A DNA stretch of 64,000 nucleotides, taken from assembly GCF_963676685.1 (NCBI RefSeq), contig NC_092351.1:42098001-42162000 (forward strand). The letters are read 5' to 3'. Below, piece by piece: positions 4,305 to 53,192 of the stretch (position 1 is the stretch's first letter; each line of letters begins with the position of its first letter). The stretch comes from Mytilus edulis (taxonomy: Eukaryota). The notes beneath the pieces were generated by a model that saw only the letters and a list, made by a program, of their open reading frames with translations, did not search any database and had not been told where the DNA came from. Both the position numbers and the translations under genes were made by a program.

Positions 4305-6654
4305 TTCTAAAAAAGGCGAGACGAGTTTTATAATGGCTAGTCAATTACTGGATGTGTTCAATTATTCTTTTGAGTCCGAGGAGCATATTGAACATTCATC
4401 AAAAGATGAAAATAATGTGATTGAAGATTCGTCAAAAACCGAAACGAAGTACGAACTTTTTAAAACCGAAGAAAGTGGAAGTCAGATAGATATAAGAACT
4501 GAGTCGAAGGATCCAAAGGAGGAAATTAGTGACGAAAAAGGTATGCCATATAGTTTTGGCTTGACTTGTAGAAGTTGCATTCTTTCAAACTTTTCATAAA
4601 GAGCCAGTGTCTAACCTGCTTTGATAATGGATCAAAATGGTGTTACTCAATACATTTACTACTATAATCGAGGATCCAAGTTATAACATATATTATAGAA
4701 TTAAGTTAGATTAATCATGATATATTCGTAATATTTTTCTTGACTACGGATCAAATAAATATGATTTAAACGTCAATAACAAATCTATTAGAATTCTCAA
4801 TACAAAATTGATATCCGAAAACCATTCTATTATCATCAACGATAATATCAACAGGCGTTCACAATGTAATTTTTTAAACGCCGGAATAAAGGTAAAGTAG
4901 TAAAAAACAAATGTTATGGGGTATTTTTCCATGAACAAAAATCAGATCATGCAAATCAATATATGCTTTAAAATAACAAGTTTTGTATTGGCGGATCCAG
5001 GGGGGGTACCGGGGGTTGGAACCCCCCTTGTTTTTGGCCGATCAATGCATTTCAATTGGGACATATAGTTGGAAATAAACTCATCATAGATACCAGGACT
5101 AAATTTAGTATATACGCCAGACGCGCATTTCCTCTACAAAAGACTCATCAGTGACGCTCGAATCCAAAAAAGTTAAAAATAAAGTAGGAAGTTGTAGAGC
5201 ATTAAGGACCAACATTCCTAAAAGTTTTGCCAAATACAGCGAAGAACCCCCCCCCTTTTTTTGTCCTGGGTTGGGAACCCCCCCCCCCTTTTTTTAAATG
5301 GCTGGATCCCCCCCTGTTTTGTTAACATCTACCAGTTTTAAAAGTGATATATATCATAGGAATAATTGTACTTCCTTTTTCCCTTTCAGATCTTGACATT
5401 CTGGAAGCGGATAACGTTATCGCTCGTCCGTTACAGAAGGTGTCTATATCTATTGAGTCCGACAACCAGCTTGAACTTACAGCAAAAGAAGAGAACAATG
5501 TTGTTGCAAAATCTATTAAAGACGAACTGAATTACGATATGACAAAACTCAAAGAGAGCGACCACCAAGAAGAGGACAAACCTGAATTTGCTGACAAAAG
5601 AGAAGCAACTGGTAGTAGAAAAAGATATCATAGTGGTATTTATTTAATATTCCTGTTACTCAAAATGGTTGTCTTACTATCAGTGATCGCTACGCTCAAA
5701 ACTACTAATCAAACAATTAATATACTATTACGAAGAAAATAATCAAATCAAAGCCACAGTGATGAATATTTATCATGTTTACATGAAAGAAGCCAAATTA
5801 TTCTGTTTTCTGTATCTTGAATTTAAAAATTATTTGATATTTTTATTAGCAGAATACAACATCACTTATGTGTATTCATTACAACTATATAATTATATTT
5901 TTTAAAGGTATAATTATATCTCCTTTTACTTTCTGTTCTAGAAAACAATGAAGATGGTAATATGATTGCCAGCCCGTTACAGAATATGTTCAAACTTGTG
6001 TCCGATGAGCAATTGAAAAATACCACAAAAGAGGAGAAAACGGTTGTAGCAGAATTTTTGATAGCTGAACTGAATTACAACATGATCAAATTTAAAAAGA
6101 GCGACAGTCAGAAAGATAAAAGTATTGAATCGGAGAAAACGAAGGAGGTTTCAGGTGATAGCTCTGATGGCATTATGTCGGTAAAAAGATACTTGGAAGT
6201 TAACTTTCCTACTAATACACATATCCTGGAAAATCAAAATAAGAACACGAGTAATGGAGAAGTTGTTGGTGCCAATGGAGAAAACGATAAAAGAGAACCA
6301 AATGTCGACTACACATGGTTAAAAAGTTCATCGGTGAAAGATATTGAAATGTCACAACTGGAGAATAAGGCACTACAAAAGGTTATTGGTCAGGTAAAAC
6401 AGGAGGATTGCAACAAAATATTAGCTCTCTTTAGAAATTCGGTTCAAGACAAGGGCATTCAAAAAGCAAATGAACTGCCTTCACTACTGATGGAAAGCGC
6501 ATTTCAAGTTCTTGAAAAAAAGAGATATGAAGATGTATTATTAGTTGATTTGTTACCAAATATGATTAGAAACAGCAGTGAAGGATCAAATGATGCGAAA
6601 GTTGATCATGCAAGTACTTCGGATGATCAACCTACGAAAAATGACAAAGATTAG
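4305..6654 (+). CDS. 3' exons of an uncharacterised acidic (E/K/S-rich) protein built from exon-sized repeats; exons 4305-4540, 5390-5635, 5942-6654
   Basis: Canonical splice signals (tttcag|4305, 4540|gtatgc, tttcag|5390, 5635|gtattt, ttctag|5942) join in phase 1 into one open frame ending at TAG 6652-6654. The three exons encode mutually similar ~70-80 aa units (MASQLL..ESEEHIE..KDENNVI; IARPLQ..ESDNQLE..KEENNVV..ELNYDM; IASPLQ..SDEQLK..KEEKTVV..ELNYNM). The 5' end was not identified (ATG 4333 or an upstream exon). Confidence 0.55.
4986..5316. mobile_element. MITE (ggcggatcca TIR family) with 5-bp TSD ttttg, interrupted by a hammerhead-repeat fragment
   Basis: ttttg|tattggcggatccag ... ctggatccccccctg|ttttg; the internal segment 5073-5243 belongs to the hammerhead repeat family. 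Confidence 0.7.
5114..5158 (-). ncRNA. Degenerate minimal type I hammerhead ribozyme (retrozyme/Penelope-type repeat fragment)
   Basis: Minus strand reads gcgtca CTGATGA gtcttttgtagag GAAA tgcgc GTC tggcgt. Stem I cgtca/tggcg is intact, and the stem II closing pair is mutated. Confidence 0.65.
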
Positions 6655-8007
6655 TTGTCTTTTTTTAAAGGATAATAAATAATACGATAATGTATATAAA
6701 AACGCTTATTGTATTGGCAAAAAGCAAATACGACTAAAATGCTAGATGCTTAATATATTAAAAAATTCTCTGAAAACATTTAGCTTAGCTGAAATATGAC
6801 AGGTAAAATAAATATATACTACGGAAGCCGTGATTAAATTCTGAAACACGAAATTCAATGTTTAAGGTTATAATACCTGTGAAGTGAAATAACCTTTCTG
6901 TCTTACAAAATAGGTATCCGTCTGTTTGGTCATTTATTTAACTGTCGACATGGATGTAAACTCATTTAAAAAGCGATACTTTTAGCAGAACTTTTTGAAT
7001 ATTTCTCCATCAAAATTACACTGAACGATATGGTCAATCACCTCGGAATTTGATAAACCGAATGAAGAGTGTGCTCATCATCAAGGTAGTCATATTAATT
7101 TACACATGTGTATACAGTTATTGTTATTTATTATGTAATTTGTAAATGTTGATTATCAATCATCGTGTTTGTCAATATAGTCATATATTGAAAAATATTC
7201 TCTGATAAATTATGCAAAAAATGCATAGAAAACTGATTTAACATTAAAAACCGTGAATAAACTCATGTGCTATGGAAGTGTAATAGCTCCCTATACCACT
7301 GTTGTCACCCGTCATCAAATTATTAGATTTTTTTTAATGATTGCTTTATATTATCGTTACAAATAAACGCTTCTTGTTATTTTCTTTGTTTTAACGACAT
7401 TATTTTCATCTGTAATTGAAATGCTTCTTTGTGAAATACATGTTTGCTTCAGATAACGGTGCACTTGACTGTGATACTTTGCTTTTGTGTATGAAAAATA
7501 TACATAAAAAGTTTCTGTGTGAGCATCAACAAATAAGGGCAGATGTAGACCATTCATGTCTTCTATAACCGTCAAATTTGTCTAAGGGTGTTTTAGTAGA
7601 AATATATAAACTATTTATAACTCATATCAATTGGCGTTTGATTCTGAACGTTCGAAAACCAAATCATTCATGAATTAGAATTTGAAGAGCATTCAAAAAT
7701 ACATAAACCTAAATGATGAACCGAATATGGCCAGATATCATGATATTTCATGTTGGACTCGGAAAAATTACCAAGATAACTTCAATAAAACAAACTTTCG
7801 CGGGCTATTTAGTTTACTGAGTTTTACAAGTTATGGATAACCCTAATATGTTAAACTTGAGTCTTTTGTTAAACTAATGCAAGGAAACTATCATTGAGTA
7901 AAAATTTATTCTGTAAATTCTTATTTTTTTCTATCTGCAAATTATATTTAAACGCTTATTTCGTGTCATATATTTTTTTGTTTTTTGCTCTTATGACAAG
8001 TCTTCTA

Positions 8008-10245
8008 TCATTGTCGTTTATAAATGCATTCTTCTCCGTATCCATTGTTAATCACATGAAACATCAAAATGATTAAATGTGTCAATGACACGTTTTGTCT
8101 TCCTGTCGGAACTGTTTGCATTAACGACTTTGTATAGCATTCAAACGCCTTTTTAATGTCGCCAGTATGGAAATAACAATAACCTAATATGTTCAAATGC
8201 CTGAAACTATGGAAAGTTCCATCGCATTCATTTACTGTATATTCTAAAGCATCCATGTACACGTAAGCCTCTTGGTCACATTCGGTGCTTATTACGGCTA
8301 GGTATAACATATACACTAATGGATGAATCATGAAAGCTCTCCCTACGGTACATTCGAATTTCATAGCATGGGGAACAAACGATAGGTCTGCTCTAGAAAA
8401 TATGACATCTTGAGCTGTAGACAGATATCCTTTTTTGTGATCAAAAGGATTTGGAAGTCCTTTCAGTTGAGCTGTAGTTCCCTTACCAATGTGTATTGTC
8501 TTGTATTTAGAACAATGACCAGTGTACAGTAGGTTTTGGGACGGCAAATCAAGGATACTCTGAATAATTGAAATCACTTTTTGAGAATTTTTGAGTCTTA
8601 GACAGTATGTAGCTAAATACAATTTACCAGATAATGCATCAATATTTTGGTTATCCTCCAGAAACTTCTGTAACTTTTCTAGTTTTTGTTGCTTTACAGT
8701 ATTATCTTTAACTTTTATGATCGTCTCCAAATACGTCAATGCAATTCGAATATTAATAAACATGCGTACAGCTTCAATGAAGCTGTCTTCGATGTCCTTT
8801 GTCGGTGTGTGATCATCAAAGTCTACAAAATATTCAGAAAGTAACTTAAAGTCAGCAAGAACAGTTTCTATATTCACTCCTAAAAAACCTCGACCCTTAT
8901 GATAATATTCCAATGGCAATCTGTATGTTTCAAATTCTGTTGTGATTCTAGAATCCAGTCTTTCTCTGCATAACTGCAGAAAATCATCAACCTTCATTTC
9001 ACTCTCTAGCCATGGGGATAAAAGGTCAACACCATCGACACACTGCAAAACATGGGATACAATTTCGGCTGAAATATCTTCAATGCATTTTATCATATTT
9101 TCTTTAAAAATATGATTTTCAAATCTATACGAAAACAAATTTTTTCGACGATCAATGTAGTGCTCCAGATGACGTTTTTCTATGCATTTTTTTAGAAATA
9201 GAAGACAGTTAACGGTGCAACGTAGTGAATATTTTGGTTGCCATAGATGTTGAGGATTATTTTCAGACTGCCAAAGTATTATTGTTTTCATGTGATAGGA
9301 ACTCAATTCTTCTGGTGCGATAGGGTGTAGAAATTTCTTTAAAATATTTTTCATCAAGATAAAGCATTGAAGCTGTGTATTATTAAAATTCCATACCAAC
9401 TCCCTTTCTTGTAACAAAAACGACACTCTCCATTCTAATGACGATGTAGGTGACATTTTATCTCCAACAGCGACTACGTGACATTTCAGCTTTGTAATTT
9501 TTTCAATAAATTCTGGAGAAGGCCATCCATGTTTTCTTTCCCTGGCAATCCACTCTTCGCCATCAATTGGCCATTCGTATAACGATATTCCAAAGGCGAA
9601 ATCTTGTTCCACTGATGCACCTAGCTTTTCCTTAATAAAGCCGTATATGTCTATATTAGCCGCAGTGGCACTTGGTCCATGACGGGATGTTTCTGTTGGT
9701 GTATCTGCTGTCTTCGTCTTTGTCAGGAAATACATCCAGAAATCAACCATTTTGTCACTGGAAAGAAATGTTTTGTCTCCTTCGATTGTTTCCAACATAT
9801 CATCAATAGTCTTTCCATGATCATTAAAAATTGTTTTTATGTTTGGATCAAGTTTTACAGGAATCAATCTTGCAAACCCTGGACGACAAACTGAAGTGTC
9901 TAGAATAAAAACCTGCCCTTCGATCTTGTTTGATTGGTCTCTATCCTTACAAGCCGTAATATTTGAAGCAACGATCATTTTGTCGATATCGCTGTCTTTC
10001 ACGTTAGTTCCTTCAGCCGTACTACCACCAAAGAATCTGCGTATTACTCCTTTATTTCGTGTATAATACAAATACTCTAGTGTAAGCATAGTGTTCTTTT
10101 GACCATTAGTCTTGCAAGAAGATGCCATTGTATAAAATGTTGCGTTAGAGACAACATCCGATACTTTTTCCAACTCAGTGTCATTAATCTGAAAATGAAA
10201 ATATACCGTGTAAGGGTCTTTTTTTGTTGTTGTCATAATCGACAT
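8008..10245 (-). CDS. Mab-21 domain nucleotidyltransferase / cGAS-like receptor (cGLR) with C-terminal helical region and TPR motif
   Basis: 745-aa ORF with the NTase signature GGSTAEG-x6-DID, a likely third acidic residue (EQDFAFGI), and Mab-21 family motifs PGFARL, HGPS, WP..G.EWI.R.R..GWPS, CHVVAVG, EWRVSF...ERELV, LSSYHMKT, LEHYI....NLF. A TPR-like segment LNILGYCYFHTGDIKKAFECYTKSL lies near the C-terminus. The true start is uncertain because a splice acceptor lies at 10189-10191. Confidence 0.9.
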   Translation of the reverse strand: MSIMTTTKKDPYTVYFHFQINDTELEKVSDVVSNATFYTMASSCKTNGQKNTMLTLEYLYYTRNKGVIRRFFGGSTAEGTNVKDSDIDKMIVASNITACKDRDQSNKIEGQVFILDTSVCRPGFARLIPVKLDPNIKTIFNDHGKTIDDMLETIEGDKTFLSSDKMVDFWMYFLTKTKTADTPTETSRHGPSATAANIDIYGFIKEKLGASVEQDFAFGISLYEWPIDGEEWIARERKHGWPSPEFIEKITKLKCHVVAVGDKMSPTSSLEWRVSFLLQERELVWNFNNTQLQCFILMKNILKKFLHPIAPEELSSYHMKTIILWQSENNPQHLWQPKYSLRCTVNCLLFLKKCIEKRHLEHYIDRRKNLFSYRFENHIFKENMIKCIEDISAEIVSHVLQCVDGVDLLSPWLESEMKVDDFLQLCRERLDSRITTEFETYRLPLEYYHKGRGFLGVNIETVLADFKLLSEYFVDFDDHTPTKDIEDSFIEAVRMFINIRIALTYLETIIKVKDNTVKQQKLEKLQKFLEDNQNIDALSGKLYLATYCLRLKNSQKVISIIQSILDLPSQNLLYTGHCSKYKTIHIGKGTTAQLKGLPNPFDHKKGYLSTAQDVIFSRADLSFVPHAMKFECTVGRAFMIHPLVYMLYLAVISTECDQEAYVYMDALEYTVNECDGTFHSFRHLNILGYCYFHTGDIKKAFECYTKSLMQTVPTGRQNVSLTHLIILMFHVINNGYGEECIYKRQ

Positions 10246-10469
10246 CAGTTTACAAAACTTTAAACGAATGTTTTTTATGTAATTATTCGTTTATTTCAAA
10301 ACTTTTTGCATGTGCCCTATTTGTTATACTAGTACTGTTTACTGTATTGCTGAATACAATAACAGCGCTTTAAGGAAATATCCAGGTTATCATACTTTAT
10401 ACCCCAGTTACCTCTCTAGATCGTAATAGCAAAATTATGATCGTAATTTGGGCAACTATAGGAACTTAA

Positions 10470-10540
10470 TTATTGGCAATGCAAATTATAGTGTCTTCTT
10501 ATCTATTGGTCAATTCTAATGATTTGCATTTGCATAATGA
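10470..10540 (-). promoter_or_regulatory. Putative cGLR copy 1 proximal promoter: octamer (ATGCAAAT) motifs and CCAAT box
   Basis: ATGCAAAT at 10479-10486, ATTGG at 10505-10509, and overlapping ATTTGCAT at 10522-10535. All are retained in the paralogous region at 18656-18706, just upstream of a conserved splice donor. Confidence 0.4.
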
Positions 10541-11749
10541 GTTCATACCATCTTAATGATCCCGCTGTATTTTTCAAATAATGGTCAAGTAACGGCAGTA
10601 GCTCGAGATCTAAGTAGGAAGAAAAATGTCATTTTCAATACTTCCATGCTGTCAGGGGGGATTGGATTTGAGGTTGGCTTATATAATTGTTGTAATCGAA
10701 AATGTCCTGGATACTTAAAACTCATAAATTTTTGGTATAATTGCATTTGTATTAAATCTCATTTTCTATCAATGAGTCTGAAATTGAAGATAATCCTGAG
10801 ATAATCCCCGGGTTTTTTTTCGCATAGTGTACTGACTTAGTCTCTATTGTATTTATGTGGGACCTGTTTTGTAAATTAGTTTGTCTTTTCTCTGTGGTTT
10901 AGTTATTAGTTATGATGATTTCGGGTTTTTTTTTTTTTGTATCTTACATTTTTTCTATTGTTTCCTGTATTTTTTTCCTTCTCATTTTTTTTACATAAGG
11001 ACAACTGCATTAAATTGATGACATGAACAATCATCAACAGGACATTTTATATGCCATTTTGAGTTTAAACACGATTAACAGTAAAATCAAATATTGATGT
11101 CATAGAAAACTGTTCGTGAATTCTACAGTAAAGATCGTGGAGAAATGTGAGATTTCCTTTTTTCAAATCCCACATTTTATGGTATTTTTGTCTATGTTGA
11201 AATTCGGATCGACACCAAAATCATTCAGTCAATATGACAATAATTGCTCAAGTCGTGTTAATTTTGAATCAGCATTATCTAGAACGTCTCTTCTCACCTA
11301 TTTTCTTGTTGGAACATTGCAAAAGATAACTTATTCGAATTCAATGTTATATGTAATATTGTTGACAAAGGAAATGAAAGTAACTTTATAAATATATTTA
11401 AATATAACATACCAACGATGATTTTGATGTTGATTGTGTCATTTCCTAGACTAAATCTGGGCTAAATGTAAGTTAGTTATATATTTGCCTGTTTCTTTAC
11501 GTCATAAGTTTCATATGCTCGAGCTCGAACCGAATAAAGGAAGTAATATTCTTAGTATGTCACGTGGTTTGTTAAAATTTATGATAAATATGTTCAGATA
11601 AAAAAAAATTAACGTCATTTATAGTGGACTTTTTTTTTATTTCAAGTAATATTTTTGGCAACCATTTTCATTTTTTTTTTTATGTCAAACATATGTTTAT
11701 GTCTGTTTTCTATCATTCATTTCATTATATATTAATCAGTTATTTCTTC

Positions 11750-13210
11750 AACAATTCCAAGACCTTCATAATTCAAATTAAATGAGTCAGGACCTACATA
11801 AATCTTTTCATGATATTCTGAAATATTCAAGGACCTCCGTAATTCGATTTCAGGATGTCGTGAAACAGTTGAGGACCTCTATCAATGGTTGGATTAAAAT
11901 TGTTTTGAATATTTCATGACCTACACAAACATTAAAAAAAAATCTGTCAAAGCTTTATTTCAATAGATAGATCCTTACTATGAGCGTCTGGATGGGACTT
12001 CCAAAGTTATGAATAATTTGTTAAAATTGCAGATTAAAGGGGGGAAATCAAGAATAGAGAAAATTTGGGACAAATAAATAAACAATAGATAATGTCTCAA
12101 TAATTAAAGAATACAGAAATCAAAAAAACATCCAGACCCTCGCTATTAACGATGAAGCTCCATAATTGTATAATTTCGTTCCTTATGTAGTATATTTAGA
12201 TCTTGCCATTGATAGAAACCAGTGCATGTGGGGAAAAGTTTAGAAGCAAATAGTATGAAACATTGGTAGATTAAAGTTCAACTTTAGTCATAAAATATGC
12301 TTTATTTTTTTTTTTTTGCGATGGTTTAAACATGTATCTGTTAAAAAGTCACATTGTTTTTATCGTGGGTTGCAGTGATGACTATTTCATTAGAGTATAC
12401 ATGTTTATTAAAGTACAATCTACACACACTATGATTACATTTGCAATACATCAGTTTATATAAAACAAAGAGTAGTGTAATGACATGGGAAAGTTAGCCC
12501 ATAAAGGAACCTCACAGAATACTGCAGCTGTGAACTAAGAGAAGAGGTGAGATGAGATAGTAATCTATTGACAGAAACATCCGTTAATCTGATGATTATA
12601 AATTCCTAACTGTCAGTATTAATTATAAGCCAATTAAACTATTAAAGTGATAATGTATCATGTAAACATAACACAGGGACCCAGATAGCTTCAACTAAAT
12701 GAGCTAATTAATTACTTGTCTATTATATAATCCGGATTGGAACGTGAGGAATAAATCGGTTGAATGTACAATGGAAGACATGTAGATATAAGAAGAGAAA
12801 GAAAAAATATGCCAAGAAATAAAGAATAGCTAGAGAATGATCGAGAATGATTGGATGCTTGATTACAAAGAATGGAAAATAATGGACAAAATCAATAGAG
12901 AATAGTGAAAATGGTATAAAAGGGGTATCCTGAAATTGAATTGTGAAGTAGATCTTGTCGTGGATAGAAAACAAGTGCCTTCGCTTTTTCCTCCCTCAGC
13001 TCGTTCCTGATGAACTTTGTTTTGAATACACTTGACCAACACACATAACGACCAGGTGTAGTCTGCACGTTTATTGTGTTATTTTTAGGATCTGCATAAT
13101 ATTCGAATCAGTATATTCTTAAATCTAATTTTGGAGGTCCTGAAAAAGGTGTGGAATCCTTTAAATTATTAAAGGATAAACTAGAATTGAATTTTGAAGG
13201 TCTTGCAATG
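11750..13210. mobile_element. Degenerate TIR element with ggacct subrepeats
   Basis: attccaagaccttcataattcaaatt (~11753) is inverted relative to aattgaattttgaaggtcttgcaat (~13186). Repeated aggacct motifs lie on the left and aggtcct on the right. No TSD was resolved. Confidence 0.4.
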
Positions 13211-13804
13211 TAATATAAATGTATTTAATACACCCACGTAGCACAAAACATTTTCAAAACATTTTTATAAGGTTGTATAAATGTCTTCTCAAAACGTTGT
13301 CAAAAAAATATTTTCATGATGTTATGTAAATATTTTGTATTGGATTTTTAAAACATTTATTTAAAACATCTTTTGAAAATAATTAACAATGATATGTAAG
13401 AATATTCATGAAAATAATTCCAATGACATTTTTTAAGATGTTTTGTTTGAATGTTCTATAAATGTTCAGAAGATATGTTGGTTCCACCTCTGAAAAACAT
13501 TTTAAAAGTATATGAGTAGAATATTTTTAACAATATTACTCCGATGTTTTTTGAATATTTTCTAAAAATGTTTCATGAAATATTAAAATAACATATTTTA
13601 ACAAGATTTCTTCATAATATTTGAACATTTCAAAATATACGCTTTTAATATTGAGAAAATTAATTTATAAAACATTTTGTTGCTAATATTTTAACAACAT
13701 TTTAAAATAATATTATGAACACATTTATTCAAAAACATTTAAAAAACGTTTCGCAATTAATATTGAGAGAATGAATTTATAAAATATTTTGTAGCTAATA
13801 TTTG

Positions 13805-14900
13805 CAGGCACGTGACAATTTATTTTCTTTACATGGGGAAAATCAACTATCCCTATCGTAGTATTCATAAGTATAGTGGATCATGTCATGTATAATAGTC
13901 TTATATATCTGTGTGTCGCTTTGTTTAGCCAATATCTACATTCTTAAATAGAGTTGTCGTTCATAAATGTCGTCTTTTGATATTTTCTTGCGTATTAAAA
14001 TATCTTTTAAATTTAAGTTCATACTTAACACTCATTAATGTTATCAATTATTTACATATTGTAAAATATATAAATATTCTTCGTTTATGTTCAGATTAGT
14101 ATGCATTTGTAGATCTTTTAACAGTATCACGCCATTTATGATTATTTATTGATGGTGTATAAGAAAGTTCAGTCAACCATTTTCTGCGACCACTTATGTG
14201 GTGGATTAAACCTGGTTTTATAGATTCTATTTGGAAATCAAGTCTGCGAAGAAGTAGACTTAACAATTCAGCATATCTAATATATCAAACCACACGCTAT
14301 AATAACATTTTGTTATATTGATCCTCAGAAGTAAAAAAAACGAGAAAAAAAGGGATGTAGACAATAAATGTAATTATAGATGTAATATCCATATGATGTA
14401 TTGCAGCCAATGTGAAATATTTCTATCAAATGCCTCAACAGAGGAGAAAAAAACAACAGTGTTATATATTTTTATATTGAAGTTAAAAAAAACTTTAAAA
14501 AGAACATTTAGACTACTGTTTAGAAATGCCCATAGCAATTTTGTAAAGAAATTATCAATATTATGGAAATTCGTTCCGCATTTGTATCATTTGTTATTTT
14601 TGCATTTTACATTATATATTTTCATGTGATAATGTTTGGGAAAGGCATGTGATAATTTTTCTTATCATATATATTTAGAGAAAATAACATATTTTTGACA
14701 GTATGAGAATAGCATATAATTAACGTGAATTCCATATTTTTATGAAATGGTGTTTAGCGGGCTGATATGAAAAAAATATCTCATGCTTCGATTATTATCA
14801 TATGCCTTTCCGTAACGTTATTACATGGCATTCCTGCGATACTCGGCAAATTCCGGAAAATACACCTCAATGGTATATTTTCAGTGAAAAACATTACAAA
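13805..14900. repeat. Dispersed repeat homologous to 25695-26860 (first part direct, last part inverted)
   Basis: ggcacgtgacaatttattttc...ccctatcgtagtat... matches 25697 onward. The segment 14745-14850 is the reverse complement of ~26715-26800. Confidence 0.7.
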
Positions 14901-15119
14901 GTAAGGTACAAAACAATTATTTGGATACTGGAAAGTATATTGTGTAAAATGAAAAAAAGAAACATTGAACATTAAACAAATGATAAAATAAATGCATTTT
15001 TTAAAGTTTCAAACATAATCTAGAAAGTCATTTTAAAAATGATCTAATACCGATCAAGCAATAGAAAGAAAAAAAAATAGCAAGTGTAATAACTGTCATT
15101 TGTAATCCGTAATTGTTGC

Positions 15120-15930
15120 TAAAAGTCTGAAATACAAAAACTAGATTTAGATAAACCATTATGTTTCCAGTCAACGAAAACAATTGTGACAATTATATAG
15201 TTATAGTTATATGTTGTTTCAAAATCTATCAAAGACGAACTGAATTACGATATGGCAAAACTCAAAGAGAGTGTCAATCAAAAAGAGGACAAACCTGAAT
15301 TTGCTGATAAAAGAGAATCAACTGGCAGTAGAAAAAGATATCATAGTGGTATTTTTTAAAATTATTTTGTTACTCAAAATGGTTGTCTTACTATCAGAAA
15401 ACGCTGTGATCAAAACTACTTATCAAGCAATCAATAAACTATTACGAATAAAATAAACAAATCAAAGCCACATGGTTGAATATTCCATCATGTTCACAAA
15501 AAAGAAGCAAAATTAATTTGGGGGTTTTATCTTCATTTTTATAATGATTTCATATTCTATAAGCAGAATCTAATATCACTAATATGTTTTCATTACATCT
15601 ATATAATCATATTTTTCAAAGGTATAACTAACCTCCTTTCACTTTCTGTTCTAGAAAACAATGAAATGGTAATATGATTATTATCCGTTTCAGAATATGT
15701 TCAAACCTGTGTCCGGTGAGCAATTGAAAAATACACCAAAAGAGAAGAAAACTGTTGTAGCAGAGTTTCTGATAGCTTAACTGAATTACAACATGGTCAA
15801 ACTAAAAAAAAGTGCGACAGCCAGAAAGAGAAGAGAATTGAATCGGAGAAAACAAAGCAGGTTTCTGGTGACAGTTATGATGGCATAATGTCGGTGAAAA
15901 GATACTTGGAAGTTAACTTTTCTAATAACA
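15120..15930 (+). pseudogene. Decayed duplicate of the acidic exon-repeat gene (remnants of exons 5390-5635 and 5942-6654)
   Basis: 15121-15200 matches ~4190-4270, and 15212-15930 matches ~5500-6220. The copy has frameshifts (aatgaaatggt vs aatgaagatggt), an in-frame TAA (gcttaa vs gctgaa) and two large deletions. Confidence 0.8.
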
Positions 15931-16223
15931 CTGTCATAGACAGTGGTTTATATTAAAAACTCCAAGATTACTTCAATAAAACAAACTTTCGCGAGCTATT
16001 TAGTTTACTGACTTTTACAAGTAAAAGATAACCCTAATTTGTTAAACTTGAATCTTTTATTAAATTAATGCAAGGAAACTATCATTGAGTAAAAATTTGT
16101 TGTGTAAATTCTGATTTTTTTTTATCTGCAAATTATAATCATAACGCTCATTACCACTTGCAAATTATATTTTAACGCTTATTTCATGTCATATTTTTTT
16201 TAGCTCTTATTTCAAGTCTACTA

Positions 16224-18613
16224 TCATTGTCGTTTATAAATACATTCTTCTCCGTATCTATCCTTAATCACATGAAACATTAAAATGATTAAGTGCATCA
16301 ATGCCACGTTTTGTCTCCCTGTTGGGACTGTTTGCATTAACGACTTTGTATAACACTCAAACGCTTTTTTTAAATCCCCATTATAGAAATAACAATACCC
16401 TAATATGTTCAAATGCCTGAAACTATGGAAAGTTCCTTCGCATTCATTCACTGTAGAGTCTAAAGCATCCATGTAAGCCTTTTGGTCACATTCGGTGCTT
16501 ATCACAGCGAGATATAACATATACACTAACGGATGGATAAAAAAAAATCCCCCAACGGTGCATTCGAATTTCAGAGCATGGGGAACAAACGATATGTCTG
16601 CTCTAGAAAATATTACATCTTGAGCTGTAGAAAGATATTTCTTTGTGTGATCAAAAGGGTTTGGAGGTCCATTCAGCTGAGTTGTAGTACCATTCACAAT
16701 GTGTATTGTCTGGTAATTTGAACAATTGCCAGTGTACAGTAGGTTTTGGGACGGCAAATCAAGGATACTCCGAATAACAGAAATCACTTTTTGAAAATTT
16801 TCGAGTCTTAGACAGTATGTAGCTAAATACAATTTACCAGATAATGCATCAATATTTTGATTATCCTCCAGAAACACCTGTAACTTCTTTATTATGATCT
16901 TCTTCGAAAATATTAATGCAATTCGAATATTAATAAACATACAAACAGCTTCGATGAAGCTGTCTTCGATTTCCGTTATCGGTTTGTTATCAATAAAGCT
17001 TGCCATATATTGAACAAGTTGCTTATCGTCAGCACGAAGAGTTTCTATATTAACTGTTAAAAGGCCTCGACAATAATAATAAAATTCCACTGGCAATCTG
17101 TATGTTTCAATGTCTTTTGTGATTTGAGAACCCAGTCTATCTCTGCATAACCGCAGAAAATAATCAACATCCATTTTACTCTCTCGCCATGGAGATAACA
17201 GGTCAACACCATTGACACATTCCAAAACACGGGCTACAATATAGGCTAAAATTCGTCAATGCATTTGATCATATTTTCTTTAAAAATATGATTTTCAAAT
17301 CTATACGAAAACAAATTTTTTCGACGATCAATGTAGTGCTCCAGATAACGTTTTTCTATGCAATGTTTTAGAAATAGAAGACAATTAATGGTGCAACGAA
17401 GCAAATTTTTCGGTTGCCATAGATGTTGAGCATTATTTTCTGACTGCCAAAGTAGTATTGTTTTCATGTGATATGAGCTCAATTCTTCTGGTGCGATAGG
17501 GTGTAGAAATTTCTTCAAAATATTTTTCATCAATATAAAGCATTGAAGCTGTGTATTATTAAAATTCCATACCAACTCCCTTTCTTGTAACAAAAACGAC
17601 ACTCTCCATTCTAGTGACGATGTGGGTGACATTTTGTCTCCCACAGCGACTACGTGACATTTCAGCTTTGTGATTTTTTCAATAAATTCTGGAGAAGGCC
17701 ATTCATATTTTCTTTTTCTGTTGATCCACTCATAGCCTTCAATTGGCCATTCGTATAACGTTATTCCAAAGGCATAATCTCGTTTCAATGATGCACCTAG
17801 CCTTTTCTTAATTAAGCCGTATGTGTCTATATTAGCCGCAGTGGCACTTGGTCCATGACGGGATGTTTTTGTTGGTGTATCTGCTGTCTTCGTCTTTCTC
17901 AGGAAATCCATCAATAAATCAACTATTTTATCATTTGAAAGAAATGTTTTGTCTCTTTCGATTGTTTCCAACATATCAGCAATAGTCTTTCCATGATCAT
18001 TAAAAATTGTTTTTATGTTTGGATCAAGTTTTACAGGAATCAATCTAGCAAACCCTGGACGGCAAACTGAAGTGTCTAGAATAAAAAACTGTCCTTCGAT
18101 ATTTTTTGCTTGGTCTCTTTCCTTACAAGCCGTAATATTTGAATCAACGATCATGTAGTCGATATCGCAATCTTCCAAGTTAGTTCCTTCTGCCGCACTT
18201 CCACCGTAGAATTTGCGACTTGAACATTCATGCCGTACATAATACAAATATTCTAGTGTAAGCATAGCGTTCTTTTGCCCTTTAGACTTACAAGAGGATG
18301 TCATTTTAAAGAATGTTGCCTTAGAGACAACATCGGATACTTTTTCCAAGTCAAATTCATTGATCTGAAAATGAAAAATATACCGTGTTAGAGTTTTTTT
18401 GGTTTGGTTTTTCCCATAACCGACATCAATTTACAAAACTTTAAACGAACATATTTCATGTAATAATTCGTTATTTTCTACACACTTTGCATGTGTCCTA
18501 TTTTTTTTATACCGGTACTTTTTAATGTATGGATGAATACAGATACTGCGCCTAAAGAGAAATGTACAGGTAACATCATTGTATACACTCACCTCTCGAG
18601 ATCCTGAGAGCAT
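16224..18613 (-). pseudogene. Second cGLR (Mab-21 + TPR) paralog; predicted exon 1 18593-18613 and exon 2 16224-18364; one 1-bp frameshift near 17250 (pseudogene or assembly error)
   Basis: ORFs 17246-18349 and 16224-17225 align end to end with the 8008-10245 protein. Adding one base at ...gac gaa [a]tt tta gcc restores a single frame. Catalytic motifs GGSAAEG..DCDIDYM and RDYAFGI are intact. ATG CTC TCA GGA TCT CGA GAG|gtgagt ... ttttcag|ATC AAT GAA splices in frame. Confidence 0.85.
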
Positions 18614-18626
18614 ATGATTGTAATTT

Positions 18627-18706
18627 GGGAAACTCCAGGCGCTTAATTTTCAGCAATGCAAATTTGAATGTCTTTTAATATATTGGTCAATTTAAATGAT
18701 TTGCAT
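18627..18706 (-). promoter_or_regulatory. Putative cGLR copy 2 promoter/5' region with kappa-B-like site, octamers and CCAAT
   Basis: GGGAAACTCC (18627-18636) fits GGGRNNYYCC; ATGCAAAT at 18656-18663; ATTGG at 18682-18686; ATTTGCAT at 18699-18706. Confidence 0.4.
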
Positions 18707-19029
18707 GAATAAATACCGCGTTAATGATCCTGCTGTATTTTTTCAAATAATAGTCAAGTGATGTTAGTAGCTCTCGGTATGGAAGTAAAATGTCAATATA
18801 ATACTTCCATGCACCCAGAGACATTCGATTTGCGTTTGCTAATATAATTGTTGCCATCGAAAACGTCCTGGATACTTAGATGCTTAATATTTTGGTAGAA
18901 TTGTATTTATATCAAATTTCATTTTCTATCACTGAGTCAATGATTGAAAATAATCTTGAGATAATCACTTTGTTTTTGGTCGGGTCACGCACTGGCTCAG
19001 TCTTTACTGCAGTTATTCGGGATGTGGTC

Positions 19030-19448
19030 TGATCTGACCGTCACTGATGAGTACATGTAGAAGAAACGCGCGTCGGGTGTATTAAATTATAATACTGATA
19101 CCTGTTTACATCACTGGGTCGATGCAACTACTGGTGGACGTTTCGTTCCCGATGGTATTACCAGCCCAGTAGTCAGCACTTGTATCAATTATATGATCAT
19201 TTTTATAAATTTCCTGTTTACACAACTTTGCATTTTTCGAAAAACTAAGAATTTTCTTATCCCAGGCATAGATTACAATATCTATATTTGGTACAACTTT
19301 TTGAAATTTTTGGACCTCAATGCTATTCAACTTTGTACTTGTTATGCTTAATAACTATTTTGATCTGAGCGTCACTGATGAGTCTTATGTAGACGAAACG
19401 CGCGTCACACTAATTAATTATAATCCTGGTACCTTTGATATTAACTAT
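19030..19448 (+). mobile_element. Non-LTR retrozyme-like insertion: ~332-nt unit bounded by two direct-repeat type I hammerhead motifs
   Basis: CTGATGA at 19044 and 19375, each followed by a short stem II, GAAACGCGCGTC and the same flanks (tgatctga.cgtca ... aattataat.ctg.tacct). Predicted cleavage sites fall after 19074 and 19406. The segment is absent from the paralogous region near 10865. Confidence 0.8.
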
Positions 19449-21618
19449 TGTAGATTTGATTGCCTTTTCTTTGTAATTTTTAGTCATAGGTTGTCTGGAC
19501 TTTTTCATCTTGCGATTTTTTTCCTGTAACTTTTCCGTCTTTTTTTTTTTTACATAAAGACAACGGCATAAGATTAAACTGTTTACCTCAGTCCTGATTG
19601 ATTATCAACAAGATATTTTTCCCAAATATACCACATTGAGTTTAAACACGTTATAGTAAAACTAAAAGTATTGATGTCATAGAAACCTGTTTGCTAATAG
19701 ATCGCTGTGAAATTCTAGAAAAAGCATGAAAAAAAATCCCATTATTTAATGGTCTTTCTGTCTATATTGAAATTCGTATCGACCTCAAAATTATTCAGTC
19801 CATAGGACAATAATTGTTCAATACGTGTTAAGGTTGAATCATTATTATCTAGAAAGTTTATTATCACCCATTTTCTTGTTGGAACATTGAAAAAGATAAC
19901 TTATTGAAATTCAAGGTTAAGCGTAATATTGATGATAAACGAAACTAAAAATTGCTTTATAAATATGTTTAAATATAACATACCAACGATGAGTTTGATG
20001 TTGATTGTGTCATTTCCTAGACTTAATCTTAGGCTAAATGAAGGTAAGCTATCTGCCTGTTTCTTTCCGTCATTAGTTGCATATGCTCAAAACGAATACC
20101 TAAAGGAAGTAGTTCTTAGCATGTCACGTGGTTTGTTTAAATTATCTCTGTATCTGTATCTGTATCTGTATGGGTACGTCGTAGTTACCACTTCTGGCTT
20201 TTATACAAATTATAATAAATATATATGATCAGACAGGCGGAGGAAACCCAATTGAATTTAAACAAAAGAAATGTGAACTCTTTGTTAGAAATATCTAAAG
20301 GTATACAAGCAAAGTTGATATATCTGAATTGTTTACATCTGTTTCTATGGGCTTTAAACGTTTAAGGTTTATGACCCCTTCTGTAGCCATTTTTCTACAA
20401 ATTTTTCAAACTTCAATTGTATCAAAACTACAGATATAATGAATAATAGAGATAGACAATTTAGTACAAATACCAAGGGTAAAATTGATGAAAAGCATAA
20501 TTCTTTACTGTTCCATTGCATTTACTAGATAAAGGGTACTTTGTGGCAAATAAACCAAGATTTTTATCGAAAATCCACAGTCAGTCATCAAATTGGCAAA
20601 TATGAGAGTACAAAGATAAAGGCTGTGGATTTTCTATAAAATTTCCACATGTTTATAATTGAATCAACACAAGGGTACATAAACCTTAATAAAGATGCAC
20701 AATTTAGGATTTTATGCATCTTCTATAAGTGTTTTACTTTAATTATAGTATGGAGATTCAAGATATTTGTAAAGTTTTGAATTATAGACAAACTTTCATA
20801 AAACTGTCGATTGTGGCCGTTCAAATCGAAGTGGATCTTTTAGTGCATAAGCATGAATTCCGTCGAAAAGATCCACAAAAAGATAATAGATTGATCATTC
20901 GAAAGCATTAATTTGAATTTCTGCAGTGCCGCCGGCGCTAGTTTTTTTTTGGGGAAAATCCTTACAATGGACAATAATTGCACCGAAAAGAGCCAAGTCG
21001 AGTTCGCCTTTTCAAGTTCAGGTGTGTTTGGGTTGCATACTATTCTGTCTTGAAAACGTAGAAAGCACAAATATTTGATACATCATCTCGCTTCAGATTC
21101 TATTATTTTTTTTTAAAGATTTAGGCTAAAGGTTGAAAAATCACGGTAATAAAAAAATGGAATATATGGGTCAAGTGAAATATCTTACTGATGAGTCATA
21201 AAAACTAGGTGTGTTCGGATAACAAATTTTAACAAAAAGTATTTGACGACGGACTTTTTAACTGGATCTTTAAAAATGCGTAACTTCAAAAAAACTTCAT
21301 TTTTAGTTTGTTTATTCTGGAGAAATTAGTCTTCAAACTCTGCCCTTCCACGAAATATTTAATTCGAATTTTTATGTTTTTAAACTTCTGAAGTTCTGAA
21401 TGCTGAAAAGCAAATACAATGATCCTCAATATAGCTAGCAGCTAGATAAAGGACAGTGTACGATAGGGCCCTTCCCCCTCCCAACCCCCGCCCTAATTTC
21501 TCATTTTTCAGATTCTGTTTTGGAAAGCTAATCATGTTAAAATATTCACTGATGTTTGAAGTTTGTTTGAATGAACATTAAAACCACTAATTTTATCAAC
21601 TGGGTGAGGGGGTATTAA

Positions 21619-33305: not shown

Positions 33306-36300
33306 CTATGACAATACAGTAGAAAATTTATCTTTAAAATCTAACGAGTCTCTTGAGCTCTCATTATCACTGAAGACTTGACTTCTAGTCACTCTTTTTA
33401 ACGGAGTATTATCAGAATCGGTATAAATATTTTCTACATCTACAAAACCATGGTTAGAATCGGTAAAACTTTTACGTGAGGATGGCGAATCTGATCTCAT
33501 TTTCAATACACGCCTAAAACTTCTAATACTAGCAGGAGAATTCTCCCTACTACTTCTTGTACTAAATGCTTCCCTACTGTCAGAATCGTAACCATTGTCT
33601 GTTTTACGACGAGAACTTCTTGTAGCTGGTCCTGGAGAATTTCGATCCAATAAACCATTTTCGCCATTTACTATATGTGAAGGTGTACGAGGAGAAGAAC
33701 GGGGATTTTTGCACCAACCATTATCACTGGGAGTGCTAGCTCGGGATGGAGATATTTCGTTTAATACTCTTGATATAGATCTTCTCCCGTTCACAGGAGA
33801 CAAACAAACCGGAGAACTGATGTTACTATTCACACAATTTTCTTTTTTTTTTGATCGATCTATCATTCCATTGAGGAAATTATTTCGTAAAACTCGCTTA
33901 TTTTCTAATAGTCCTTTTTGTACAGTATCTTTAATATAATCTGCAACCACTAATTTTGAACCAAGTATATAATTGTTCAATTCAGCTTTTACTCGGTCAG
34001 TGACATTGCCAGCCTTTGATGATTTAGACAAATTTCTAATTACATTAATTTCTTTTGGTTCATCTTTGATACTTATCGAAGCACTTCTTAATTCACGTGG
34101 AGATTTAGAATTTTCATTGGCAAACATATCAGCATCACATGTTTGTCTTCGTGTCCGTAATTCACGCTTTATTGGTGAAACTGATGGATCAAAATCTTCC
34201 TCTTCATCATAAGCTTTGGTTTCTAAAGAATCTAATGTTTTCCTTCTTATCCGTTCATGTTTAGAAGTGTCTGCTTTAATCAGACTTATACCTGTAAAAG
34301 TTGTACTACGAAGACGGTAATCACCACTTTTTGTCATGTCCACTTCATCAGGGCTCATAATAAAAACATCACAGAAATTTCTCTCCTTCAACTCTTTTTT
34401 ACGCTTATATCGTTCCTTCTTAGTCTGAACTAACCTATCCGGTTCAATAGTCAGAACATTCCTTAAGTTTTCAGTCACTAACTTTCCAGAAAATCCCATT
34501 TCTGAACCGGCATCACCCGCATCCTTACGCGGTGATAAGGATGATAGTTCGGGAATATAGTCTTGTGTGTCATCATCTTGCAGGAGAAAGTCAGTAAAAC
34601 TTCTTTCCCTTTTTTCTAAATGTAAGTCCTCGATTTCTTCTTTAATGTCAGGGGATGTTTCATAAGCACTAGGGTCAAAATTATAGTATATATTCTGTTC
34701 TGGGTATAATTCCACTATTTTTTGTGCCTCTCTATCTGAGAGACGCATGTCAACTAATGCATCATTTAGTCCATGGAATGCTTCTATTCTAGATTTATAG
34801 TACTGTTTCTTCATTTTCTCACGTTTACTGACCATATAACACAAATTACGAACCTGTAAAATGAATGAGAGATTGTTAATATTTGCCAATCATTACATGA
34901 AAGTATTTATTTCTTCATAAAAGCTAAATAAGTGATGTCCATGAAGTTGGGGCCTCTTCCACAATCATGGATTGTAAAAAAAAACACAAAAAAAACAGAG
35001 AAAATGTTTATAGATCTTAAACGCAATATTCAAATTTTGAAACGGGACCGGAATTCATTTGTAAAGAGTTTTCATCTTTTTATTTTTTTACAACAGTTAA
35101 AACACGTACAGAATATTTTTGTATGCTTTAAAATATTCAAACTTGCCCACATAAGCAAAGACAACTCAGATAATTTGATTATATAAAGAAATGTAGAGAA
35201 AATTTACCTATCATGTTATGTTACAAGAAAACAAGAACAATGACTCCCATGGTTTTTTTTTCTGACAGCACATACACATCTGGTATGAGCTTTTTCTCCT
35301 ATGCGTTCAAAATGTTATGCTTATATTTTATTCTAGTCACCAAAATGTTTTACCATGGATAATTCCTACAAAGTGCTCACTTCTCATATCTAATTTAAAA
35401 ATTCTTAGTTTTTTTTTCTTTCCTGGTACACAAGTGCTTTTACATGTATAACTCTTACAATATTTGAAAACCTACTGCTTGAAAAATTTCTCTGTGACCC
35501 ATACCTTTTATTTATATTTTTCAACAAAAACTTTAAAATTATATTTCTGCAAAGGATTGAAAAATTCTACTGGCTTAAACTAAGAAACCCAATCTACTAC
35601 CAAAAATGCTGCAATCAACCTTTCACATGTGTAAGATACACCATAAATGTTTATAGATAAATATTATTCACAAATATTAGCTCTATAATTGTGATTGATC
35701 TATTATTAATTTGCACTCTGTATAACTCATTACCCTTTCTAAATCTTGTCGTAGTTGTACAAACATCTTCATTCTGGACAATAAACTATCTTCTTGTTGT
35801 TTTTCAAAGAAATCTTCCTCCTCAGTTTTAGGTGTTAATAATGGTGCACCAAACATGGACTAAAAAACATTACAAATAAAATTAAATATGTCTCAACCTA
35901 AATATCCAAAGTTAGAATAATTAGACATTTATATTTCATAACCTTCATTCATCAGGTACAAGAGTGTCTAAACGAAATAATCATTGGTTATTAAAAAACA
36001 CTGCTCTTCGTATGCCTTCAGTTTAAGGTACATTGACAAATGAACAGTTTTTAATCAGTGCTTATTTAAGTGCCAAGGTTCTTTCTGTATGTTAAAAAAA
36101 TTTTCTCTGTTGGAATTGTTAATACTAAATTTTAATGGAAACAAACTTCTAATTCACCTATAATTTTATTTTCCTTAAGTTTTTATCTGTATAAATTTTA
36201 CCTACAAAGCACCACATTCAAATTAAATTGTACATGTCTTCCATTGTTGGTCATTTGAAAGTTATGACCTTAAATAACTATATTAGTTGTTTAGCAGTAT

Positions 36301-53015: not shown

Positions 53016-53192
53016 NNNNNNNNNNNNNNNNNNNNNNNNNNNNNNNNNNNNNNNNNNNNNNNNNNNNNNNNNNNNNNNNNNNNNNNNNNNNNNNNNNNNN
53101 NNNNNNNNNNNNNNNNNNNNNNNNNNNNNNNNNNNNNNNNNNNNNNNNNNNNNNNNNNNNNNNNNNNNNNNNNNNNNNNNNNNNNNNNNNNN
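53016..53192. other. Assembly gap (177 N)
   Basis: Run of n, preceded by a ~180-bp tandem duplication (52650-52990). Confidence 1.

What the first reader, a model, noticed from the sequence alone, without database searches (positions are those of the whole stretch)
8008..18613. Tandem pair of cGAS-like receptors fused to a C-terminal helical/TPR module
Seen: two paralogous ~740-aa proteins with a complete nucleotidyltransferase active site (GS..EG..DxD plus a third Asp) and ~330 extra C-terminal residues ending in a TPR-like motif. Established: Mab-21/cGLR enzymes are animal innate-immune receptors that make cyclic dinucleotides for STING, and the family is expanded in bivalves. Inference: the TPR tail may be a sensor or autoinhibitory module for a non-canonical (possibly protein) ligand. 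That would make this an uncharacterised second-messenger immune locus and the best candidate for an undescribed system in this window.
Basis: partly seen in the sequence, partly recalled or inferred. Interest (0 to 1): 0.8.

Follow-up and report, generated by a model that had tools for sequence, protein, structure and literature searches.

The report
Mussel cGAS-like enzyme genes, TPR-like tail
This blue mussel locus holds one intact, transcribed gene and one frameshifted copy of a cGAS-like nucleotidyltransferase fused to a TPR-like helical tail; this type of fusion was already catalogued and belongs to a very large lophotrochozoan family whose function is still untested.

Summary
The window is Mytilus edulis.

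**Copy 1 (minus strand).** It is an intact, transcribed two-exon gene that matches RefSeq XP_071126291.1 (736 aa).
- Its first ~400 residues fold like cGAS (Z 26).
- It keeps the GS / DxD / third-Asp catalytic motif.
- Its last ~340 residues form a helical solenoid with a beta insert and one TPR-like hairpin.

**Copy 2.** It is not an intact 740-aa protein. It has a 1-bp frameshift, two in-frame deletions, and changes at two family-invariant residues beside the catalytic Asps. It is probably decaying.

The real first exons lie at 11413-11442 and 19984-20013.

**The locus is not an undescribed system.**
- Li et al. 2023 list cGLR-TPR fusions and count 218 cGLRs in M. galloprovincialis.
- Their 140-enzyme screen included oyster relatives. 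At least one was made as the core only, and none is marked among the 15 actives.
- The tail profile finds 1156 protein clusters. Of 70 long hits, 69 carry Mab-21_C.
- This genome has at least 78 loci with the tail, and a brachiopod has the same architecture.

The idea that the tail is a sensor or autoinhibitor remains an untested inference. A mildly acidic pI (about 6.4) argues weakly against nucleic-acid sensing. This is a new member of a known kind, of moderate interest.

The parts
8008..10188 (-). Copy 1, exon 2: coding sequence for residues 11-736, plus the stop codon at 8008-8010
   Evidence: 726/726 identity to RefSeq XP_071126291.1. RNA contigs of three runs cover about 7933-10188/10191 and nothing in the intron.
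10189..11412 (-). Copy 1 intron (1224 nt, GT..AG)
   Evidence: A PacBio RNA contig joins 10188 to 11413, with ends CT..AC on the + strand. The three RNA runs show no depth here, while the DNA-like run X1 covers it.
11413..11484 (-). Copy 1, exon 1 (seen to at least 11484). The ATG is at 11442 and encodes MTQSTSKSSL. A possible internal GC donor near 11488/11489 would skip this ATG.
   Evidence: Loose ends of the X15/X16 contigs match 11491-11505.
9025..10167 (-). cGAS-like NTase core plus Mab-21_C helical lobe (raw ORF residues 27-407)
   Evidence: VIA-align gives Z 26.7, rmsd 3.1 A, 317 aligned residues against mouse cGAS. Foldseek top hits are MB21D2, Sp-cGLR1 and cGAS.
9982..10026 (-). Catalytic motif GSTAEGTNVKDSDID (G74 S75 ... 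D86 x D88)
   Evidence: Invariant in 21 homologues and 16 paralogues. Aligned to the OAS2, MNT and Sp-cGLR1 motifs. Translation checked.
9601..9603 (-). Third catalytic Asp (D215, within EQDFA)
   Evidence: Invariant. Aligned to the D of Sp-cGLR1 'SVDLTLGI'.
8011..9024 (-). C-terminal module (raw residues 408-745): about 14 helices with a beta insert at 570-640. Conserved motifs include ID.LSGKLYLAT, Y.G.CS, DV.FS, EC, HP.VY and LN.LGYCY.
   Evidence: AF2 model pLDDT 86. Only generic TPR-solenoid matches, Z 8-11. The module profile finds 1156 clusters.
8122..8196 (-). TPR-like hairpin (LNILGYCYFHTGDIKKAFECYTKSL)
   Evidence: TPR_1 E 6.7e-4, sub-threshold. Matches consensus-TPR chains. Generic TPR proteins match this stretch 10-16 times each.
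17246..18364 (-). Copy 2, exon 2, N-terminal part (Mab-21 core). It ends at a premature TAG (17246-17248) after a 1-bp deletion at 17252/17253.
   Evidence: S85C and E213K changes at family-invariant sites.
16224..17243 (-). Copy 2, C-terminal module in the shifted frame. It is still open but has in-frame 33-bp and 6-bp deletions.
   Evidence: Its branch is long in the C-half tree: 0.21 against 0.069 for copy 1.
19984..20013 (-). Copy 2, conserved coding part of exon 1 (MTQSTSNSSL, GT donor). The inferred intron is 18365-19983.
   Evidence: No RNA data for copy 2.
5431..11379 (.). First unit of the tandem segmental duplication. Its partner is about 15211-19949.
   Evidence: Direct-repeat families D1-D11 with 81-93% identity.

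Best explanation
Copy 1 is an expressed member of a large lophotrochozoan branch of the cGAS-like receptor (cGLR, Mab-21) family. Almost every member of this branch found here fuses the nucleotidyltransferase core to one specific ~340-residue TPR-like helical module.

The most likely mode of action is that of a cGLR. The enzyme is held inactive until a ligand binds, then makes a nucleotide second messenger from NTPs at the GS/DxD/D site. The signal would be read by one of the mussel's STING-type receptors.

The fused tail most likely acts as a built-in recognition or regulatory domain. It may bind a protein or peptide, or gate the core. This part is inference.

Copy 2 is a recently duplicated paralogue that is probably decaying into a pseudogene.

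- **Shown:** gene structure, transcription, fold, motif conservation, and obligate coupling of tail and core.
- **Inferred:** enzymatic activity, product, ligand, and role of the tail.

The confidence given is for the whole statement. Membership of the cGLR family alone is about 0.9.
For: - **Fold.** cGAS Z 26; MB21D2 and Sp-cGLR1 are the top Foldseek hits.
- **Catalytic residues.** They are invariant and align with solved NTases.
- **Transcription.** Copy 1 is transcribed and spliced and matches a RefSeq protein.
- **Selection.** dN/dS is 0.36 between the two intact paralogues.
- **Whole-protein model.** It is confident, with pLDDT 87 and pTM 0.88, as expected for a fixed two-part architecture.
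- **Tail and core go together.** Of 70 long hits to the tail-only profile, 69 carry Mab-21_C.
- **Family size.** At least 78 loci with the tail occur in this genome.
- **STING.** Ligand-binding-domain exons are present in this genome.
- **Prior classification.** Li et al. 2023 class such proteins as cGLRs and list TPR fusions.
- **Copy 2 decay.** Frameshift, deletions, S85C and E213K, and a long branch.
Against: - No activity has been shown for any member.
- Oyster relatives (samples 95 and 96) were in the 140-enzyme screen with nucleic-acid ligands. They are not marked among the 15 actives.
- The pI of about 6.4 lies below the >8.5 typical of nucleic-acid-sensing cGLRs.
- The third Asp lies 126 residues after the DxD, outside the X50-90 spacing in the published motif.
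- The tool returned no model coordinates. I could not measure convergence of the acidic residues or locate the tail-core interface.
- The copy 2 frameshift shortens an A run from 3 to 2 and could be an assembly error.
Confidence: 0.55

Rival explanations
1. The protein is an active nucleotidyltransferase with a different chemistry. It might make OAS-like linear 2'-5' oligonucleotides, or nucleotidylate a protein or RNA held by the TPR-like tail. It would not feed STING.
For: - The GGSxAEGTxxxxSDxD motif aligns best in sequence with OAS2 (E 0.0024) and with MNT-type NTases.
- The pI is acidic.
- Relatives are not among the CDN-producing actives of the published screen.
- TPR domains usually hold protein partners (general knowledge).
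Against: - Overall fold and sequence are closest to cGAS, cGLRs and MB21D2.
- The Mab-21_C lobe that forms the cGLR cage is present.
- There is no Pfam OAS1_C match.
Confidence: 0.15
2. The protein is a non-enzymatic Mab-21 scaffold or adaptor. The TPR-like tail and the Mab-21 body would assemble signalling partners without making a nucleotide signal. This would resemble MAB21L1/2 or the shrimp Mab21 proteins reported to activate IKK-epsilon outside nucleic-acid sensing.
For: - The abstract of PMC12928593 describes such Mab21 proteins in crustaceans.
- No activity is known for this branch.
- The pI is acidic.
Against: - GS, both Asp of the DxD and the third Asp are invariant in 21 homologues and in 16 of 16 aligned paralogues, down to about 20% identity. 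Such conservation is not expected if catalysis were lost.
- Two other sampled paralogues (L007, L020) do lack the motif.
Confidence: 0.12
3. Copy 2 is a working gene. Either the 1-bp frameshift is an assembly or haplotype artefact, or the locus now encodes a separate core protein and a separate tail protein.
For: - The change is a one-base shortening of an A run, AAA to AA, relative to paralogue L002.
- Both halves remain open for 367 and 333 codons.
- dN/dS against copy 1 is about 0.45 in both halves.
- Exon 1 and the splice sites are conserved.
Against: - Two further deletions are unique to copy 2.
- S85C and E213K fall at positions invariant in the 21-member alignment, beside the catalytic Asps.
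- The C-half branch is about three times longer than copy 1's.
- No copy 2 protein of 410-1300 aa appeared in the protein search, although copy 1 and L002 from the same assembly did.
- No RNA data could be laid on copy 2.
Confidence: 0.3

Closest known systems
cGLR-TPR fusion class of Li et al. 2023 (PMC9980059). It includes C. gigas EKC35826.1 (screen sample 95) and C. virginica XP_022291350.1 (sample 96).
   Same: - Same family. Sample 95 is nearly identical to hit P0010, which is 43% identical to the window protein over 96% of its length.
- Same Mab-21 core plus C-terminal module.
- The paper already describes this as an expanded bivalve cGLR repertoire (218 in M. galloprovincialis).
   Different: - This is the M. 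edulis member, in a tandem pair with a broken copy.
- The paper treats the tails only as Pfam TPR hits. It does not describe the specific ~340-residue module or its near-exclusive coupling to Mab-21.
- At least sample 96 was expressed without the tail.
cGAS, Sp-cGLR1 (PDB 8GJY) and human MB21D2 (PDB 7LT1)
   Same: - NTase core plus helical lobe fold (Z 25-27).
- GS/DxD/D motif.
- WR.SF and SSYH.KT motifs.
   Different: - No Zn-thumb insertion (from comparison with the cGAS sequences shown).
- An insertion of about 35 residues lies between the DxD and the third Asp.
- The pI is acidic, not basic.
- There is an extra 340-residue C-terminal module.
OAS2 (PDB 9H1Z)
   Same: The catalytic loop sequence GGSTAxGTxLKxGSDxD is nearly the same.
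   Different: - There is no OAS1_C domain.
- The rest of the protein matches cGAS and cGLRs better.
TPR solenoid proteins (KLC, APC/C subunits, PlcR/Rap, BtubC, IFIT)
   Same: An alpha-solenoid of paired helices with one recognisable TPR motif at the end.
   Different: - Matches are weak: Foldseek E >= 0.02, and Z 8-11, below the tool's ~13 caution line for helical repeats.
- The module has a conserved beta insert and Cys/His-containing motifs that canonical TPR arrays lack.

Membership tests
cGLR (cGAS-like receptor; criteria of Li et al. 2023) | Active-site motif h[QT]GS-X8-20-[DE]h[DE]h-X50-90-h[DE]h | tested here: inconclusive
   GS75, D86-I-D88 (X10) and D215 are present and invariant. 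However, G rather than Q/T precedes GS, and the third Asp is 126 residues after D88, outside X50-90. Li et al. accepted oyster relatives aligned over the same length as cGLRs. Copy 2 keeps the Asps but has S85C and E213K.
cGLR (cGAS-like receptor; criteria of Li et al. 2023) | Homology across both the NTase core and the C-terminal helix bundle | tested here: met
   Pfam Mab-21 at 25.0 bits (cut-off 24.1) and Mab-21_C at 49.7 bits. The profile hits Sp-cGLR1 at 3e-19 and cGAS at about 1e-11.
cGLR (cGAS-like receptor; criteria of Li et al. 2023) | Predicted structural homology to known cGLR/CD-NTase enzymes | tested here: met
   AF2 pLDDT 87. cGAS Z 26.7, rmsd 3.1 A, 317 residues. MB21D2 Z 25.3.
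cGLR (cGAS-like receptor; criteria of Li et al. 2023) | [quoted passage not shown] | not testable with these tools
   This needs biochemistry. Published screen samples 95 and 96, which are relatives, carry no 'active' note.
cGLR (cGAS-like receptor; criteria of Li et al. 2023) | A STING-type receptor in the same genome (pathway context, not strictly defining) | tested here: met
   PF15009 STING_LBD exons score over the cut-off at five places on C3 and C8.
TPR repeat proteins | Tandem 34-residue TPR motifs recognised by profiles | tested here: inconclusive
   One motif only, sub-threshold in copy 1 (19.8 bits) and copy 2 (22.8 bits) against a 27.8-bit cut-off. Of 70 relatives, 17 match TPR_1 at E <= 0.001. 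Structural matches to TPR solenoids reach Z 8-11.
OAS (2'-5'-oligoadenylate synthase) | OAS1_C domain and OAS-type overall sequence | tested here: not met
   No OAS1_C hit in Pfam. Only the catalytic loop aligns with OAS2, E 0.0024.

The most novel reading that the evidence does not exclude
The ~340-residue TPR-like module may be the ligand-recognition domain of a lophotrochozoan cGLR clade that senses non-nucleic-acid ligands such as proteins or peptides. These enzymes would then be single-chain 'sensor plus cyclase' receptors, analogous to repeat-domain immune receptors. The hundreds of paralogues would represent diversified specificities. This would also explain why core-only or nucleic-acid-stimulated constructs gave no marked activity in the published screen.
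Probability: 0.2. Interest if true: 0.75.

Novelty: new member of a known kind. Interest (0 to 1): 0.35.

Why it matters
cGLRs are a major family of animal pattern-recognition receptors, yet ligands are known only for a few, and all of those are nucleic acids. Bivalves have hundreds of cGLR genes. This work shows three things:
- A large share of the mussel cGLR genes sampled here carry one specific fused helical module.
- That module is found almost only together with the Mab-21 core.
- The published biochemical screen left the full-length architecture unexplored for at least one relative.

This defines a concrete construct to test, full length against core only, for non-nucleic-acid sensing. 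The locus itself is an ordinary member of that family, and one of its two copies is broken.

Tried and rejected
Rejected. The matching place in copy 1 has no ATG and no RNA coverage. The real exon 1 is 1.2-1.6 kb further upstream.
- **A specific known fold for the tail.** Foldseek on the PDB gave nothing at E <= 0.001. The best hit was IFIT5 at E 0.02 and TM 0.22, which is not meaningful. The wide VIA search gave only generic TPR solenoids at Z <= 11.
- **PADLOC on the whole protein and on the tail.** No meaningful hit.
- **Word-based protein search on the tail region alone.** It found only close Mytilus relatives. The exhaustive profile search was needed.
- **Accession search of the Li et al. 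supplements.** The M. galloprovincialis orthologues VDI77470 and VDI31386 were not found in the files as held, one of which was cut when stored.
- **Literature search for mussel Mab-21 induction.** Nothing usable.
- **Single-use tools.** Read laying allows one call and was used on copy 1, so I could not test copy 2's transcription or its frameshift.
- **Spliced protein.** I did not type or join it. I searched exon by exon, used the raw ORF, or used the stored RefSeq protein P0026.
- **Raw-ORF artefact.** The raw ORF used for folding carries 19 N-terminal intron-encoded residues. These were disordered in the model.


Full report
**What is there**

The region holds two minus-strand paralogues. 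Copy 1 is one open frame at 8008-10245. Copy 2 is two frames, 17246-18349 (367 aa) and 16224-17225 (333 aa).

A DNA alignment of the copies shows 90% identity. In copy 2 there is a single-base deletion just before the junction of the two frames, plus in-frame deletions of 33 and 6 bases.

Direct-repeat analysis shows the pair is part of a tandem segmental duplication of about 6 kb per unit, spaced 8.2-9.7 kb apart. The units are roughly 5431-11379 and 15211-19949. The duplication also copied part of a neighbouring RD3-like gene.

**Organism and annotation**

The best protein hits are Mytilus proteins.

The M. trossulus cluster representative has an M. edulis member, XP_071126291.1 (736 aa). 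It is 726/726 identical to the translation of 8008-10188. So copy 1 is already an annotated 'uncharacterized protein'.

**Gene model and transcription**

Contigs from three RNA runs of two studies cover about 7933-10188/10191 (two short-read metatranscriptomes and one PacBio library). They do not cover the neighbouring DNA, while a DNA-like run covers everything.

The PacBio contig joins 10188 to 11413, skipping 1224 bases with GT..AG ends on the gene's strand. Upstream of the joint lies ATG ACA CAA ... TTG|gtatgt, encoding MTQSTSKSSL. This matches the N-terminus of the M. trossulus orthologue.

- The true protein has 736 residues.
- The first 19 residues of the raw ORF are intron read-through.
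- Short loose ends in the two short-read contigs suggest a second 5' splice form. It would use an internal GC donor near 11488 and skip this ATG. This evidence is thin.

Copy 2 has the same exon 1 at 19984-20013, with an intact donor and acceptor.

Searches used the raw ORF, the single exons, or the stored RefSeq protein.

**The N-terminal 400 residues**

- Pfam gives Mab-21_C (4e-13) and Mab-21 (2e-5, just over the cut-off).
- An AlphaFold2 model built on 21 homologues is confident: pLDDT 87, pTM 0.88.
- Residues 27-407 superpose on cGAS with Z 26-27 and rmsd about 3.1 A over about 315 residues, and on MB21D2 with Z 25. The top Foldseek hits are MB21D2, the coral Sp-cGLR1 and cGAS.
- G74, S75, D86, D88 and D215 are invariant in 21 homologues down to 29% identity. 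They are also invariant in 16 paralogues of this genome down to about 20% identity. Two further sampled paralogues (L007, L020) lack the motif.
- A profile of the N-terminal part aligns GS...SDxD with the catalytic loop of OAS2, MNT-type transferases and Sp-cGLR1. It aligns D215 with the Asp of Sp-cGLR1 'SVDLTLGI'.
- In the model these residues sit where a pol-beta-type transferase has them: GS after strand 68-73, the DxD at the start of strand 87-99, and D215 in strand 210-222.

I could not measure distances, because no coordinates are returned.

There are two deviations from the motif published for cGLRs. G instead of Q/T precedes GS, and 126 residues rather than 50-90 separate the DxD from the third Asp.

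**The C-terminal 340 residues**

Folded alone, the module gives a confident model (pLDDT 86). It has about 14 helices with a small beta insert.

- Foldseek finds nothing at E <= 0.001.
- An exhaustive structural search gives only generic TPR solenoids at Z 8-11: BtubC, PlcR, kinesin light chain and APC/C subunits. This is below the level at which helical repeats can be trusted.
- Only the last hairpin (raw residues 684-708) looks like a TPR in sequence. It is sub-threshold in Pfam but matches consensus-TPR proteins.

A profile built from the tail alone (13 paralogues) was searched against 1.84 billion representative proteins.

- It finds 1156 clusters at E <= 0.001 and 267 at E <= 1e-10.
- Most hits are 650-800 residues long, with the match at their C-terminal end.
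- Of 70 long hits, 69 carry Mab-21_C and 46 carry Mab-21.

The tail is therefore a distinct domain found almost only fused to this enzyme core.

All named hits but one come from bivalves, across all major groups: Mytilus, Crassostrea, Sinanodonta, Potamilus, Mercenaria, Ruditapes and Solemya. The exception is the brachiopod Lingula.

This genome has at least 78 places with the tail, often in clusters. A search with the whole protein gave 754 first-look candidates.

**What is already known**

Li et al. 2023 (PMC9980059) defined cGLRs across animals and noted the extreme expansion in bivalves.

- They counted 218 cGLRs and 9 STINGs in M. galloprovincialis.
- They state that some cGLRs are fused to tetratricopeptide or ankyrin repeats.
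- Their table of 140 screened enzymes includes sample 95, C. gigas EKC35826.1. It is nearly identical to hit P0010, which is 43% identical to the window protein.
- It also includes sample 96, C. virginica XP_022291350.1. The natural protein has 717 residues, but the listed construct stops at '...ILECIGKE'. That is exactly the core-tail boundary.
- Neither sample carries the note that marks the 15 active enzymes.

The same paper reports that nucleic-acid-sensing cGLRs have pI > 8.5 and proposes non-nucleic-acid ligands for acidic ones. The window protein has pI 6.4 (core 6.65), and its relatives range from 5.8 to 7.5.

**Selection and the state of copy 2**

The two intact paralogues are copy 1 and L002, which lies 5.3 Mb away.

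- Overall dN/dS between them is 0.36.
- The tightest constraint is on the terminal TPR hairpin (0.19).
- The loosest is on the first helices of the tail, raw residues 401-470 (0.70). Counts are small.

Copy 2 shows several signs of decay.

- Its frameshift shortens an A run from three to two relative to L002.
- It has two private deletions.
- It has S85C and E213K at positions invariant in the family alignment, next to the catalytic Asps.
- Its C-half branch is three times longer than copy 1's.
- It groups with L002 in the N half (98/93 support).

I consider it a decaying copy at about 0.65-0.7. An assembly error cannot be excluded without reads.

**Verdict**

The sequence observation is real for copy 1 and overstated for copy 2. 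The family assignment is right.

The claim of an undescribed system is not right. The architecture is catalogued, the gene is annotated, relatives have been screened, and the locus is one of many.

What remains open, and is mildly interesting, is the function of the tail. No one has reported activity for this branch, and at least one relative was tested without its tail.

The best explanation is a ligand-gated second-messenger synthase whose fused TPR-like domain recognises or regulates. Activity, product and ligand are all inferred.

Noticed in passing
window 5962-6654 (+); partial copy at 15211-15931: An ORF of 230 aa matches Pfam RD3 (3e-10). Its 5' part and upstream region were duplicated together with the cGLR gene.
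   Followed up: partly
window 11485-11513 (-): Loose ends of two short-read RNA contigs fit a second splice form of copy 1. It would run from an internal GC donor near 11488/11489 to the same acceptor, removing the ATG at 11442. Translation would then start at a later Met, for example the one in MASSCK. Support is only 10-15 letters.
   Followed up: partly
window 9616-9855 (copy 1) vs copy 2: Between copies 1 and 2, raw residues 131-210 have dS 0.04, against 0.16-0.47 elsewhere (2 synonymous and 13 non-synonymous differences). This looks like a recent gene-conversion tract.
   Followed up: partly
G000:C6:67.02-67.36 Mb; C8:45.65-45.69, 51.3, 60.2 and 84.1-85.0 Mb; C12:26.55-26.75 Mb: Dense clusters of further Mab-21 plus tail genes, several with internal stops. 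The family is organised in tandem arrays with frequent pseudogenes.
   Followed up: no
P0172 (Lingula anatina XP_013416040.1, 709 aa): A brachiopod protein has the same core-plus-tail architecture (tail profile E 1.7e-14 at residues 417-706). The fusion therefore seems older than bivalves.
   Followed up: partly
P0047 (Mytilus coruscus CAC5379851.1, 1129 aa): It matches the tail profile in two stretches, one at residues 175-421. It may be a fused gene model or a different architecture.
   Followed up: no
window 33306-34889 (-): An ORF of 527 aa, rich in Ser, Arg and Lys, with no Pfam match.
   Followed up: partly
window 46971-47070 and 53016-53192: Runs of N (100 and 177 bases). I left them as they are.
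   Followed up: no
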